Shown here: positions 6,576 through 10,699 of the stretch, in pieces
Layout: each line of letters opens with the position of its first letter
Position numbering within the stretch: position 1 is the stretch's first letter
Source: Schmidtea polychroa
Lineage: Eukaryota
Assembly (NCBI GenBank): GCA_044892525.1
Contig: CM097885.1
Location: forward strand, 204,724,001 to 204,788,000
Length of the DNA: 64,000 nucleotides
Reading direction: 5' to 3'
Made by a program: the position numbers and the translations under genes
The notes under the pieces: generated by a model
What the model was told of the DNA's origin: nothing
Database searches by the model: none
Seen by the model: the letters and a program-made list of their open reading frames with translations, nothing else

Positions 6576-8289
6576 CTATACAAAATAAAAATATTATATA
6601 TTTATTATGAAACAATTTATATGTAATGTTTATGTATAAAATCCATTAAAAATTTTATATGAATACTGTATTGAAAACTAAAATTTCTATTCGAATATTA
6701 AAACAAAAAAGTGATTAAATTATTAAGCTTTGAAAATAAAATATTAATGTAAATTAATTTATAATAAGAGTTAACATCTTATTTCTAATTCCCGATTTTT
6801 TAAAAATTAGATGAAAAACTCAATCTTAAAACCGAGTCCATTTACAAAATAAAATATACTTTAAGGTACAGGTATTCAGCACTAAAGTATAATCATTAAA
6901 TATTAAGGGAAGTTGCCCATTAAATTGTATACTTAACCAATAAAAGTGCTTTTCTCACAATTAATAATAACAAATTAAATTATATATATAAATCCTGAGT
7001 TTCACATATGTTGTTAATATTGTGTTAGTATATGGGGATTGACTTGTTTACAGTTTCTAGTGCAATTATTTGTCTCACATAACACTTTGACCATTGACTT
7101 CCGCCAGATACAACCGCGAAGTCTTCGCCTGATCTTCGTATTGATACTATGTATTGGGCTCAAAAACTATTGAATAGGAGCGCGTACTTTTTACTGCTCG
7201 AATATCTTCTTCGTATTATGACAACCAATATGTCATACGCCGTTGTTTCTTTCTTTGCCTTTCTCAATGAAAGCATCCTATCTTTAGATCGGATTCTTCC
7301 AGCCTATTATGCGTTAACTATAAATACAATTAATTAAGAAGACACAATTACATTATAAATTTTATTTAAAACAATTACATTAAATTTCTATGCACTTTAT
7401 GGGGTCGGCATCAATGATTAAACCCAGAAAAGAGTTGTTGATGAGTATCTCGACCCATAAAACTCTTCGAACAGCATCAGAGCTGTCACTGGCTGATATA
7501 TTGTCACAATCTGTTTTCTATTCATCTTTTACAGCTTTTTTGCCTACAGAAATTTTTCTTCTTTCGATTTACAGTTGGTGTGCACCGCAGGTGGAATTTC
7601 CATGGTAGAAATATGTTGGGAAATTCAGTTGGCTGCATTATCTATCTCGAGATTCAACGTTTTAATTTTGATTCTGAAAGTATCTGCAAACGAGCATAGG
7701 TTTGTTTATTGATTAATCTCTATGAGCTCTACTCTGTCTTTTTATTGTTGTCGGATTTATTAGTCTATGTAATTTTTTATTCAATTCTTTTGCGAGGCAA
7801 GAGTTAAACCATGTTCTTTGCATTGCGTCTATTTGTTGCCGCGTCTCGTTTAAATGAAGCTGTAGTTTGACTATTTATTTTTGTTTCTCGACACAATTCT
7901 TGTAATAATCGGTAGATCTAAGCATGAAATGATAACATAAGGTATATTTAGAATACGATGAATTTTAACAAAGATTTTTCAGATAAAATGGGACGGAGAA
8001 CATGCAATTTTCACACATTTAAATTCGGTTGCTCATAAAAAATATACTAATCAGCTTATAAACAATCAATTATTAACTTCTTTTATTTCAACTAAAGATA
8101 TTTCAGATGAATATAAAGTTGCTCAAATTGAACTTGCAAGAACTTATCATGCAATTATGCATCATCACAGCTATTTAAGCACTGACTGTGGAATAAAATT
8201 AAATTCTAAAATGTATGAGACCTCAACTATCGCGAAAAAAGTACATTGCTGGAGAACAAAGGCCGAGGCGATAGTAAAAAATATACTTG

Positions 8290-8872
8290 TTGAAAAACAA
8301 ATCTATAGTATTCCATGGCCCTTTCAGCTGCTTTTTCTTTTGGCAAGACATGGTAAATTAAAAATATTGTTTCAATCCATGCGGCAATAAATTAAAGAAT
8401 TATCATTAAATATTTATATACAACACGATCATTAACCATATTAAGAACCAGTTTAATAACGGAAACACACTGGTAATTAATGTAGATACAGAAATATACC
8501 AAGGAAATTGTGATTTAACACAACCATAAGCGATTTCTAAATACAAAAACCTACAATCGGATAAAACGGTGATATCGAATAATGAATTGTTTAAAGTATA
8601 ATTGAGAACTTCCTTTTTCAAATTGTCAATAAGAGGTGGATGTTGCAGCAGATATATTATACAAAGAAGAACACATATCACTAAGTCGATTAAAATAATT
8701 AAACATAACATTCGACGCATTGGTGATGATTTTAATTCATCTGTCGCACCTTCTACGTGAAGATTACTGGCAAGACCATATGTTTTCTATTTGATGGATC
8801 AAACTTTTTAAAATAGGAGCTTTTTCTGATATACTCGACATATAAGATTTATATAGATTTCAATAAGACTGT
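8290..8872 (-). pseudogene. STARD3: Processed, SL-bearing pseudogene of a STARD3/STARD3NL (MLN64/MENTAL domain) mRNA
   Basis: SL then MSSISEKAPIL, a frameshift, then SPMRRMLCLIILIDLVICVLLCII..NLKKEVLNYTLNNSLFDITVL..CRF...YLMIIL*FIAAWIETIF..HVLPKE. This is collinear with the MENTAL domain (RRTFCLFVTFDL...SFVLAWLETWFLDFKVLPQE) with no introns. Confidence 0.85.
8839..8872 (-). other. Genomic copy of the planarian spliced-leader exon (about 8 nt 5'-truncated), fused directly to an mRNA body
   Basis: ACAGTCTTATTGAAATCTATATAAATCTTATATG versus recalled SL ACGGTCTTATCGAAATCTATATAAATCTTATATG (2 transitions). It is followed by coding sequence rather than a GT donor, so it is not an SL RNA gene. Confidence 0.85.
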
Positions 8873-10699
8873 TTTTCTATTTGAGGGATCAAACTTTACA
8901 ATATTGAATTGAATAAACAACTTGAAATCTCTTTATTTTTACTGCAAATCCTTTCAGTGCAATGAATTTTAGTACATATCATTTGCCGAAATTTATCTTT
9001 ACTGATGCTTTGAAAAATATCATAATTTCCATTAAATACTTCATAAACTTCTCGAATTAAATTAGGATTACTAGAATATACAAATCGTCTGATCCATTCG
9101 TTCAACAATTTCAATGACCAGTCATTTAAATAGATTCTATCGACAAAGGTAATTTTCGCCAAACAATCTTCAGCAATGTTGGATTTTTCCATAAATTACG
9201 TTACGGTAAATGGATTCTTCAATCAAATTACATAACCATAAAAAACAAAAACATTCAATTAAAATATCAATTCACCAAGTTAACAGCATCAATTAAAACA
9301 ATCCAAAATGCAACTCAGGATTGACCACCAAATCTATTGAAATGGTTTTAAGTTATATCACAAATGATATTTATTATTCAATTGCTACAGATGTGTCAAA
9401 TAATTGATCGCGTAAATTATTCTCTTTTGTGATTTGCTATTTTTCTGTAACTCAGGGAATTCAAAATAAGTTGGTGGATTCTTTTGAAGATTCTCATGAA
9501 GGATATGCTGATATTTATAAAAATATTGAGACATTTTTGAAATCCAATAATTTGGACATGAGTTACCTATCCGCTTATTCTTCGAACAATGCACCGATAA
9601 ACTATGGTGTTCATAATTCAGTTTATCAAAAACCTTTAGAAAAATCTTTGGGTGTTATAAAAGCAAACTGTCAGTGCCATGTCATTCACAATGCTGGAAG
9701 AAACGCTTGCAAAATCCTTTCTTACGACATTGAAAGTTTAGTTTTAAAAGTTTATACCGAATTTTCAAAACGTGCAAAACGTGATGCAGAGCTAAAAATG
9801 TTTTTTGAAGGTTTTGATATGGAATATCAAAAAGTAATCACACATGTTTCAACAATGTGGTTGTCTTTATATCGCAGCATTAATAGATTGATTAGATCAT
9901 GGCCCACAGTCAAAGCATATTTTTTGAAAATTGGTGAAGAAGAATGCGAAAGTATAATTTGAAATTTATAAAAGATAACAAAAATGGATTACAAATGATT
10001 TAAAGACTGAATTAACATTACCAGAATGCTATTTATATTTTGTCCATCATTATATGAGTGTCTTGAATGAAGCAATGTTAAGTTTTGAAAAAATTATATT
10101 GCCAGTACCGATTTGTACGATTTAATGAAAGACTTGAGAGACAAAATAACCAGTAGATTAGCTAACAAGTTTTATGGAAGTAAAGTTAAAGATTCTTTAA
10201 AATATTTTTCAAAATCACAAAGGACAAAATTTATCTTAGAAGCTGACAAAGTATATAGCAGAACGCTCGCTTATTTAAACAATTTTTATGACTATGAAAA
10301 CACCTCATTTGTACTTTTTAGTATCTTTAATTTAAAGCAGCAACTAAATTATGATAATGTTCTAGCAGTTTCTAAAAAAATATGATAAACGATTTGAACG
10401 AAGATACGTTATACGACAAAGTAGACGCTGTGAACCGTATACAAGAGAAAATAAAAAAAACTAAACTTATCAGTTGACCAAATGTGGGTTAAAATTTTTG
10501 AGGCATCTAATTTTTCAGAGTTACAAAAACTGGTTGGAAAAAAAAATTTCAATACCAGTTAGTAATGCATTTGTTGAGCGTTATTTTCTCTGGTGGGCAA
10601 TTTATGGACGGATGAACGCAATTGCTTGGATGTTGCAATGGTCAAAGCTGAGTTATGCACAAAAATAAATTACAACATGATCTGTTCAGTATTTTTTTT

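What the first reader, a model, noticed from the sequence alone, without database searches (positions are those of the whole stretch)
8290..8872. Retroposed trans-spliced mRNA: a spliced leader frozen in the genome on a STARD3/MENTAL pseudogene
Seen: a 34-nt SL match is joined directly to an intronless MENTAL-domain sequence, and the whole piece sits inside a hAT transposase ORF. The SL's terminal ATG (8841-8839) opens MSSISEKAPIL, which contains an ExxxIL dileucine-type sorting motif suited to an endosomal STARD3-family protein. Established: the SL is added only at the RNA level, and flatworm SLs end in AUG that can initiate translation. Inference: this is a record of germline or neoblast reverse transcription of a mature trans-spliced mRNA, and suggests the parent gene uses the SL AUG as its start codon. 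The copy is 3'-truncated with no poly(A) tail, unlike classic L1 retrocopies.
Basis: partly seen in the sequence, partly recalled or inferred. Interest (0 to 1): 0.8.

Follow-up and report, generated by a model that had tools for sequence, protein, structure and literature searches.

The report
Spliced-leader mRNA copy inside a solo LTR
The spliced leader fused to an intronless MENTAL-domain sequence is real, but it is cargo captured inside the long terminal repeat of a BEL/Pao retrotransposon that later spread to dozens of sites, and the window holds one dead solo copy of that repeat.

Summary
Window 8872-8839 (minus strand) matches the 3' 34 nt of this genome's spliced leader (SL) at 32 of 34 positions. 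It abuts an intronless copy of exons A-F of a MENTAL-domain gene on C2 at 44.17-44.18 Mb. That parent has an AG acceptor exactly at the junction and no genomic start codon ahead of the domain.

The interpretation needs revision. The piece is not a free-standing retrocopy. Window 9328-8287 is a 1,041-bp solo LTR of a BEL/Pao retrotransposon. Sister copies have TG...CA ends and 5-bp target duplications. Elsewhere the same LTR is followed directly by a primer-binding site. At least about 40 copies exist.

The LTR lineage carries processed 5' parts of host mRNAs: eIF1/SUI1, TTC39 and SL+MENTAL. The SL-MENTAL piece replaced most of the eIF1 piece. The 5' junction shares TAGA. The 3' junction lies on a 9-of-11 look-alike of the LTR end plus primer-binding site. 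This fits LTR-mediated retroposition by template switching, and it explains the 3' truncation and the missing poly(A).

The captured reading frame decays neutrally. The ExxxIL motif claim is not supported. Two earlier unchecked notes of this scan report SL fusions elsewhere in this genome.

The parts
8287..9328 (-). Solo LTR (1,041 bp) of a BEL/Pao LTR retrotransposon, SL-MENTAL cargo type, 'Form B'. It begins with TGGTC. The terminal CA and the 3' target duplication are missing in this copy.
   Evidence: About 50 sister copies at 86-96% identity share the same ends. Fifteen sisters have TG...CA ends and 5-bp target duplications, eight of them perfect. The same LTR is followed directly by the primer-binding site TGGTAGCAGAGCGTGGTTCCC at two loci. 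Two hAT paralogs show the empty site. A 13-bp deletion between AGCAA repeats would explain the lost end (inferred).
9215..9328 (-). LTR backbone, 5' part. It is shared with the eIF1-type and TTC39-type LTRs of the same element family.
   Evidence: BLAST of LTR variants and the DNA searches.
8941..9214 (-). Piece X, a 274-bp insert in the backbone that is present only in the Form B/C LTRs. It overlaps a 98-aa ORF (8896-9192). Its origin is unknown.
   Evidence: It is absent from Form A LTRs. All 19 genome hits lie inside this LTR family and no exon-structured parent was found. Pfam finds nothing.
8886..8940 (-). End of the backbone plus a remnant of the first roughly 10 codons of the captured eIF1/SUI1 sequence, up to TTTGATCC. 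The ATG has decayed.
   Evidence: Comparison with eIF1-type LTRs. Pfam SUI1 scores E=1.4e-22 on an eIF1-type LTR.
8873..8885 (-). A 13-nt leftover of a duplicated unit: the last bases of exon A plus the first six of exon B. Together with part of 8886-8894 it forms the 27-nt direct repeat of 8808-8782.
   Evidence: One sister locus (L009/L021) carries the 87-nt SL+exon A unit twice. A deletion between TTGATCC motifs in that form yields this structure. Other sisters lack the SL unit altogether.
8839..8872 (-). Spliced-leader relic, the 3' 34 nt of the SL ending in ATG.
   Evidence: Alignment to SL RNA genes. Genome count 186 against 0 for the control.
8287..8838 (-). Intronless copy of the parent MENTAL-domain mRNA. 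Exon A is 8838-8789, B1 8788-8646, B2 8645-8568, C 8567-8490, D 8489-8437, E 8436-8319, and the first 32 nt of F are 8318-8287. There are 26 mismatches, a 2-nt and a 1-nt deletion, and several stops.
   Evidence: Pfam MENTAL.
9329..10668 (+). Decayed hAT transposase coding region, the part downstream of the LTR insertion on the plus strand.
   Evidence: ORFs. Paralog L015 has a continuous 229-aa ORF across the site and a Dimer_Tnp_hAT domain. The flank matches other hAT copies at 90-97% identity and those matches stop exactly at 9328.
7986..8286 (+). Decayed hAT transposase coding region, the part upstream of the LTR insertion.

Best explanation
Window 9328-8287 (minus strand) is a dead solo LTR of a BEL/Pao LTR retrotransposon that integrated into a hAT transposase gene. 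The LTR of this lineage has a region between a backbone of about 160 nt and the terminal CA that holds processed 5' parts of host mRNAs.

An eIF1-carrying LTR acquired the 5' 590 nt of a mature, SL trans-spliced and fully spliced mRNA of a STARD3-family (MENTAL plus FFAT-like) gene on C2. The most likely route is inside the virus-like particle, during minus-strand synthesis next to the primer-binding site. Synthesis either started on, or switched to, the host mRNA at a sequence that resembles the LTR end plus primer-binding site. It ran to within a few bases of the SL 5' end and then switched back into the eIF1 segment at a shared TAGA.

The chimeric LTR was then copied to both ends of the element, amplified by ordinary integrase-mediated transposition, and mostly reduced to solo LTRs. 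Later rearrangements produced the form seen in the window: a tandem duplication of the SL+exon A unit, deletions between short repeats, and gain of piece X.

Shown: the anatomy, the parent gene, the LTR identity, the copy number and the junction similarities. Inferred: the template-switch or mispriming steps and their order. The captured frame has no function now.
For: - Parent and SL: introns are absent and the acceptor sits at the SL junction. The SL equals the exon of the SL RNA genes.
- LTR identity: TG...CA ends and 5-bp target duplications in 15 SL-MENTAL-type and 5 eIF1-type solo copies. A primer-binding site lies directly after the LTR at 2 and 5 loci respectively.
- Full element: a polypurine tract precedes the 3' LTR and the flanking CAAAT duplications match in L078. 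Its interior has ubiquitin+DUF1759, RVT_1, Peptidase_A17 and DUF5641.
- Cargo variants: SUI1 at E=1.4e-22 and TTC39 at E=7.6e-12. The TTC39 piece has an exon-split parent on C4.
- Junctions: TAGA is shared by eIF1 and the SL. The parent sequence 3' of the junction matches the LTR end plus primer-binding site at 9 of 11 positions.
- Single capture: the parent groups with the Form A LTRs, and Forms B, C and D form a derived clade with support 97/94. Copies are 94-96.6% identical to the parent mRNA.
- Neutral decay: dN/dS is 1.3-2.9 against the parent and 1.1 among copies.
- Precedent: the mechanism is described by Tan et al. 2016, PMC5131818.
Against: - No element was seen with an SL-MENTAL-type LTR at both ends.
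- The one full-length element examined has different cargo in its two LTRs despite matching target duplications. Normal reverse transcription does not predict this.
- The window copy itself lacks the terminal CA and a target duplication, so its status rests on sister copies and on an inferred 13-bp deletion.
- The parent has TA where the LTR has CA at the 3' junction.
- The letters of the 5' extension on the parent mRNA contigs were not displayed.
Confidence: 0.87

Rival explanations
1. One reading: a free-standing retrocopy of the trans-spliced mRNA was made by LINE-type target-primed reverse transcription and landed directly in the hAT gene.
For: The SL and the intronless exons are real.
Against: The insertion in the hAT is 1,041 bp and includes 456 nt upstream of the SL. 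The same unit with the same ends occurs at about 50 loci with 5-bp target duplications. There is no poly(A). The LTR context with a primer-binding site is seen elsewhere.
Confidence: 0.02
2. Capture at the DNA level: an SL-bearing retrocopy made by any reverse transcriptase first inserted into, or was patched by break repair into, the LTR of a resident BEL/Pao copy. That copy then became the source of the family.
For: The genome holds many other SL fusions that are not in this LTR, so free SL-cDNAs clearly reach the germ line. End joining can also use microhomology at its junctions.
Against: The cargo replaces the eIF1 segment instead of interrupting it. There is no poly(A) and no duplication at the cargo borders. 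The 3' border lies exactly at the LTR end on a primer-binding-site look-alike, which reverse-transcription chemistry predicts and random insertion does not. The same LTR slot holds two other processed host pieces.
Confidence: 0.09
3. The SL-like stretch is a chance or low-complexity match, or the junction is an assembly chimera.
For: The sequence is AT-rich.
Against: The count is 186 against 0 for the reversed control. Sister copies are identical to the SL RNA gene exon over 34-37 nt. The same junction occurs at dozens of independent loci, each with its own flanks.
Confidence: 0.01

Closest known systems
LTR-mediated retroposition chimeras (Tan et al. 2016, Genome Res, PMC5131818)
   Same: A partial, 3'-truncated host mRNA without poly(A) is flanked by LTR-retrotransposon sequence. 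It replaces element sequence and shows microsimilarity at the switch points. There are chimeras of several host genes and further rounds of transposition. A BEL element is among the published cases.
   Different: Here the cargo lies inside the LTR itself, next to the primer-binding site, not in the internal region. It is therefore present in both LTRs and survives as solo LTRs. It carries a spliced leader, and it reached about 40-50 copies.
Retroviral and Bs1-type transduction of cellular genes
   Same: Cellular mRNA pieces are recombined into a retroelement during reverse transcription and then propagated by it (established knowledge, summarised in PMC5131818).
   Different: No sign of selection on the captured frame. 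The cargo is in the LTR.
Partial SL sequences at LTR and LINE loci in parasitic flatworm genomes (PMC12582326)
   Same: Partial leader sequences are found at repeated mobile-element loci of flatworms.
   Different: Those authors suggest that the elements' own transcripts were trans-spliced. Here the SL is joined to a host gene's exon at that gene's own acceptor, so a host mRNA was captured.
SL-relic retrogenes of dinoflagellates (for example PMC5585692)
   Same: An SL frozen in DNA marks retroposition of a mature trans-spliced mRNA (details from my own knowledge).
   Different: Those are free-standing and often functional retrogenes. This one is dead cargo in a transposon LTR.
Classic L1-type processed pseudogene
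   Same: Intronless and derived from a mature mRNA.
   Different: No poly(A). The 3' end is truncated rather than the 5' end. There is no variable-length target duplication at the cargo borders, and integrase-type 5-bp duplications flank the whole LTR.

Membership tests
Retrocopy of a trans-spliced mRNA | Parent introns absent | tested here: met
   Six introns of the C2 parent are missing, and the exon borders carry GT..AG in the parent.
Retrocopy of a trans-spliced mRNA | SL joined exactly at the parent's trans-splice acceptor, with no SL-like sequence in the parent gene | tested here: met
   The parent reads ...(TA)n...TTCTGTTACAG|TCGAG and has no SL-like sequence upstream.
Retrocopy of a trans-spliced mRNA | Leader equals the species' own SL RNA exon | tested here: met
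   SL RNA genes with a GT donor and a Sm-like site were found. The window matches 32 of 34 positions and sister copies match 34-37 of 37.
Retrocopy of a trans-spliced mRNA | Parent mRNA carries the SL | tested here: inconclusive
   Spliced parent-type contigs from two studies extend 25 letters (20 in a third run) beyond the acceptor and do not follow the genome. The tool did not print the letters.
LINE-type processed pseudogene | Poly(A) tail and a target duplication at the retrocopy borders | tested here: not met
   The copy ends inside exon F at the LTR terminus and has no poly(A).
LTR-mediated retroposition chimera | Retrocopy flanked on both sides by LTR-element sequence and replacing element sequence | tested here: met
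   The backbone plus eIF1 codons 1-17 lie on the 5' side, and CA plus the primer-binding site lie on the 3' side. The rest of eIF1 is gone.
LTR-mediated retroposition chimera | Microsimilarity at the switch points | tested here: met
   TAGA is shared at the 5' junction. The 3' junction shows 9 of 11 matches to the LTR end plus primer-binding site.
Solo LTR of a BEL/Pao element | TG...CA ends and a 5-bp target duplication | tested here: inconclusive
   Met in 15 sister copies. The window copy has the TG end, but its CA and its 3' duplication are lost. A 13-bp deletion is inferred from paralogs.
Solo LTR of a BEL/Pao element | The same sequence adjoins a primer-binding site or a polypurine tract and a BEL/Pao interior elsewhere | tested here: met
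   Primer-binding site after the LTR. Polypurine tract before the 3' LTR. DUF1759, RVT_1, Peptidase_A17 and DUF5641 in the interior.
STARD3 / STARD3NL family (parent gene) | MENTAL domain followed by a FFAT-like motif | tested here: met
   Pfam MENTAL at 2e-32. EEEFFSP follows the domain in the parent translation. The FFAT reading is by eye.
STARD3 (as opposed to STARD3NL) | C-terminal START domain | tested here: inconclusive
   No START hit near C2:44.16 Mb even at E up to 10, but short exons could escape detection. The nearest relatives are a mix of proteins with and without START.
hAT transposon (host of the insertion) | hAT C-terminal dimerisation domain and a transposase ORF spanning the site | tested here: met
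   Shown in paralog L015. The window's own ORF fragments gave no Pfam hit but align to the paralogs at the DNA level.

The most novel reading that the evidence does not exclude
This BEL/Pao lineage may have an LTR slot, next to the primer-binding site, that repeatedly takes up the 5' ends of host mRNAs starting at or near their start codons. Three cargos are known: eIF1, TTC39 and SL-MENTAL. All three are in the same reading frame relative to the LTR end and read on through the primer-binding site. That could reflect a recurrent mechanism, such as tRNA mispriming on look-alike sites in packaged host mRNAs. It could also reflect a selected use of host translation-start leaders by the element. 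Together with more than 60 other SL fusions in the genome, SL relics would then give a genome-wide record of which trans-spliced mRNAs were reverse-transcribed in heritable (stem or germ) cells.
Probability: 0.12. Interest if true: 0.7.

Novelty: new variant of a known kind. Interest (0 to 1): 0.5.

Why it matters
The finding shows that in a planarian a mature trans-spliced mRNA was reverse-transcribed inside an LTR-retrotransposon particle and then multiplied about 40-fold as part of the LTR.

The SL acts as a built-in proof of the RNA origin. It also marks the true 5' end and acceptor of the parent gene, which appears to depend on the SL AUG for translation.

The case extends LTR-mediated retroposition to flatworms and to cargo held within the LTR. 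It gives a concrete sequence clue, the primer-binding-site look-alike at the junction, to how capture begins.

For annotation, it warns that about 40 MENTAL, about 20 SUI1 and many TTC39 hits in this genome are transposon cargo and not genes.

Tried and rejected
- Rfam found nothing in the window stretch, in LTR copies or in an SL RNA gene locus. Only weak sub-threshold hits appeared elsewhere. The LTR 5' part is therefore not a known small RNA.
- Before the LTR ends were recognised I read the constant 3' end, the 5'-truncated copies and the short duplications as LINE-type retroposition. I dropped that reading once TG...CA ends, fixed 5-bp duplications and the primer-binding site were seen.
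- A Helitron reading was considered and dropped because the ends do not fit.
- The word-indexed protein search gave no hit. The exhaustive search gave only relatives at 41% identity or less, so no transcript-derived planarian protein was available to read the N-terminus.
- The only read-laying run dropped the loose-end rows beside a (TA)n run.
- The Rossi et al. 2014 and Zayas et al. 2005 planarian SL papers are not held. SL type 1, 2 or 3 could therefore not be assigned, and the SL identity rests on the genome's own SL RNA genes.
- The gapless repeat finder missed the LTR pair in L078. BLAST found it.
- Piece X has no Pfam hit and no parent locus.
- The dileucine-motif idea was rejected on the sequence.
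- Selection on the captured frame was rejected (small counts).

Full report
**1. What is in the sequence**

Read on the minus strand, window 8872-8839 is ACAGTCTTATTG...CTTATATG. It is followed at 8838 by TCGAGTATATCAG.

The genome is 781 Mb with four large chromosomes, and the window is C1:204,724,001-204,788,000. It contains SL RNA genes on C2 at 109.76, 113.23-113.25 and 113.90 Mb. Each has the exon ...GCCGTTAGACGGTCTTATCGAAATC...CTTATATG, followed by GTA(C/T)GGACC and a Sm-like AATTTTTGA.

The window stretch matches the last 34 nt of that exon at 32 positions, and both differences are CG to CA or TG changes. The 22-nt SL 3' end occurs 186 times in the genome with at most one mismatch, against 0 for the reversed control. 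The SL identification therefore rests on this genome's own genes, not on memory. The planarian SL papers could not be read.

**2. The parent gene**

A DNA search of the whole genome found one locus that matches in separate blocks, at C2:44,184,000 to 44,168,844 on the minus strand. Its exons are A (50 nt), B1 (145), B2 (78), C (78), D (54), E (118) and F. They are separated by GT..AG introns of 44 nt to about 6 kb.

In the window they are contiguous: A 8838-8789, B1 8788-8646, B2 8645-8568, C 8567-8490, D 8489-8437, E 8436-8319, and the first 32 nt of F at 8318-8287.

Upstream of exon A the parent reads (TA)n TTTTAATATTTTCTGTTACAG|TCGAG. This is an acceptor at the exact SL junction, and there is no SL-like sequence.

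With the SL ATG in front, the parent frame is open for 234 codons. It runs through a MENTAL domain and an EEEFFSP (FFAT-like) stretch. The first genomic in-frame Met lies inside the MENTAL domain. The SL AUG is therefore the likely initiator.

RNA-like contigs from two studies are spliced A-B1-B2-C and match the parent, not the repeat copies. They carry 25 further letters 5' of the acceptor that do not lie on the genome, and a contig of a third run carries 20. The tool dropped the rows that would have printed those letters, so the presence of the SL on the mRNA is strongly suggested but not read.

No START domain was found at the locus. The nearest relatives elsewhere, at 41% identity or less, are a mix of MENTAL-only and MENTAL+START proteins. 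I call the parent a STARD3-family gene and leave STARD3 versus STARD3NL open.

The proposed sorting motif reads EKAPIL in the window and ERAPVL in the parent. Neither fits [DE]xxxL[LI].

**3. It is not a single retrocopy**

The same search returned about 50 further loci at 86-96% identity, and 41 MENTAL hits of which only one is the parent.

Aligning the flanks showed a unit of 1,041 bp, window 9328 to 8287. It includes 456 nt upstream of the SL.

Two paralogous hAT copies show the uninterrupted site...ATTTG(G/A)GAGCAA(G/A)TATAT.... One paralog has a continuous transposase ORF across the site and a hAT dimerisation domain at E=1.6e-9.

**4. The unit is an LTR**

- Sister copies begin with TG and end with CA.
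- Fifteen of them are flanked by 5-bp duplications: eight perfect, five with 4 of 5 matches, two with 3 of 5.
- At two independent loci the unit is followed directly by TGGTAGCAGAGCGTGGTTCCC, a primer-binding site. At one of them the element interior follows.
- The first roughly 205 nt of the unit also head a 453-bp LTR. That LTR occurs as solo copies with 5-bp duplications and as 5' LTRs with the same primer-binding site.
- One full-length element (L078, 6.7 kb) has a polypurine tract before its 3' LTR and CAAAT on both flanks.
- The interior of that element holds a ubiquitin domain fused to a DUF1759 Gag, then RVT_1, Peptidase_A17 and DUF5641. This is the BEL/Pao set.

The window copy lacks the terminal CA and the 3' duplication. 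A 13-bp deletion between the LTR's AGCAA and the target's AGCAA would give exactly the observed sequence. That deletion is inferred.

**5. The LTR carries host mRNA pieces**

- The 453-bp LTR contains codons 1 to about 97 of eIF1/SUI1 (Pfam E=1.4e-22). Most of the 21 SUI1 hits in the genome lie at loci that other searches identified as LTR copies.
- The 3' LTR of L078 instead contains a TTC39 N-terminal piece (E=7.6e-12). That variant is also multi-copy. Its cargo matches a locus on C4 in two blocks about 1 kb apart, so it is a processed copy of an intron-bearing gene.
- The SL-MENTAL type exists in several forms:
  - Form A (about 800 bp): backbone, eIF1 codons 1-17, 37 nt of SL, then exons A-F.
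  - Form D: the same with the 87-nt unit 'SL + exon A + AGAAAA' in tandem.
  - Form B (the window): a deletion between two TTGATCC motifs of the Form D arrangement, plus a 274-bp piece X in the backbone.
  - Form C: no SL, through a deletion between the resulting 27-nt repeats.

These rearrangements explain the direct repeat at 8894-8868 and 8808-8782 that brackets the SL in the window.

A tree of the MENTAL part places the parent with Form A and makes Forms B, C and D one derived clade with support 97/94. The copies are 94-96.6% identical to the parent mRNA. This points to one capture followed by amplification.

Piece X has no parent locus and no Pfam hit.

**6. How the capture probably happened**

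At the 5' junction the eIF1 segment reads GAAGATAGAGATGG and the SL reads CCGTTAGACGG. The chimera reads GAAGATAGACGG, so four bases are shared.

At the 3' junction the parent continues ...CAGCAA|TATGGAAGCAG and the LTR continues ...CAGCAA|CATGGTAGCAG, which is the LTR end plus the primer-binding site. Nine of eleven positions match directly after the junction.

The cargo replaces eIF1 codons 18 onward. It has no poly(A) and no duplication of its own.

These are the marks of LTR-mediated retroposition by microsimilarity-guided template switching, as described by Tan et al. 2016 for flies, mosquito (a BEL element), fish, chicken and mammals. That work includes multi-gene chimeras and further transposition of the chimeras (PMC5131818).

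The position of the 3' junction suggests one of two starts. Either the tRNA primer began on the host mRNA at the look-alike site, or the nascent strong-stop DNA moved there after a few bases. Both are inferences.

A DNA-level insertion of a free SL-cDNA into an LTR remains possible. It does not predict the replacement of eIF1 sequence or the junction position.

**7. Function**

The window copy's frame from the SL ATG stops after 25 codons. The copy has two frameshifting deletions and further stops.

Some sister copies keep an open MENTAL frame. However, dN/dS is 1.3-2.9 against the parent and 1.1 among copies (small counts). The cargo is therefore decaying neutrally. I assign no present function to the window copy.

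**8. Context and novelty**

SL relics as marks of retroposition are known in dinoflagellates (PMC5585692). Partial SLs at LTR and LINE loci have been noted in parasitic flatworms, where they were read as trans-spliced transposon transcripts (PMC12582326).

What is unusual here:
- a host mRNA with its SL sits inside the LTR itself;
- the same LTR slot was used serially for three host genes;
- the chimera amplified to dozens of copies;
- the junction lies on a primer-binding-site look-alike.

I rate it a new variant of a known kind, of moderate interest.

Two first-reader notes of this scan report SL fusions elsewhere in this genome. My own counts show that the STARD3 case is one of many. Eleven of 30 sampled SL sites are other fusions, three more belong to a second repeated family, and 66 dispersed hits match an AGTGA-extended SL 5' half.

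**9. Limits**

- All statements about 'most copies' come from pairwise comparisons.
- The different cargo in the two LTRs of L078 remains unexplained.

Noticed in passing
L078:505-7211 (G000:C3:30497004-30503710): A full-length BEL/Pao element has an eIF1-type 5' LTR (454 bp) and a TTC39-type 3' LTR (522 bp). The same 5-bp duplication, CAAAT, lies on both flanks. Normal reverse transcription should give identical LTRs. Later gene conversion is possible but was not shown.
   Followed up: partly
L078:1138-2142 (also L071:2133-3137): The Gag ORF (DUF1759) starts with a ubiquitin domain (Pfam E=1.5e-22) that ends in ...CGG. This is another host-derived module, and host deubiquitinases might cleave it off.
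   Followed up: partly
L079:1656-2537; L078:671 onward; L078:6836-7219: The three LTR cargos (MENTAL, eIF1, TTC39) are all in the same reading frame relative to the LTR end. In 5' LTRs the frame reads on through the primer-binding site (..HGSRAWFPSGGYAP..) for about 50 codons and stops shortly before the gag ATG. The chance of this is about 1 in 9, and its meaning is unknown.
   Followed up: partly
Genome-wide, for example L022, L026, L031, L033, L034, L037, L038 (position about 1470-1525 in each): Many dispersed loci carry a near full-length SL joined to unrelated non-GT sequence. The SL there is preceded by a constant (G)TAGTGA that the C2 SL RNA genes lack. The extended 5' half gives 66 hits at two mismatches or fewer, against 0 for the control. 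The SL RNA gene that supplies this extension was not found.
   Followed up: partly
L019, L023, L034 (G000:C1:7658607, C1:20250615, C1:262511249): A second repeated family has the SL joined to the same downstream sequence (AAATGCATATTTAAGTGAAGTTCTC...). It may be another amplified SL-bearing retrocopy or transposon cargo.
   Followed up: no
G000:C2:109761209/109762286, 113231950/113233787, 113250277/113252114, 113897407: SL RNA genes lie in inverted pairs 1.1-1.8 kb apart within a stretch of about 4 Mb on C2. Rfam has no model that detects them.
   Followed up: partly
G000:C1:122320141-122320692: A SUI1 fragment (profile positions 27-70) lies directly beside a MENTAL match, and both hits report a 209-aa open frame. 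This looks like a further LTR rearrangement that fuses the two cargos.
   Followed up: no
window 11689-12504 (minus strand): A 271-aa ORF looks by eye like a retroviral-type integrase core (..HQSNGLVER..). It probably belongs to another LTR element close to the hAT remnant. It was not tested.
   Followed up: no
window 8941-9214 (minus strand): Piece X, with a 98-aa ORF (8896-9192), occurs only inside this LTR family. It has no Pfam hit and no parent locus, so its source gene is lost, diverged or foreign.
   Followed up: partly
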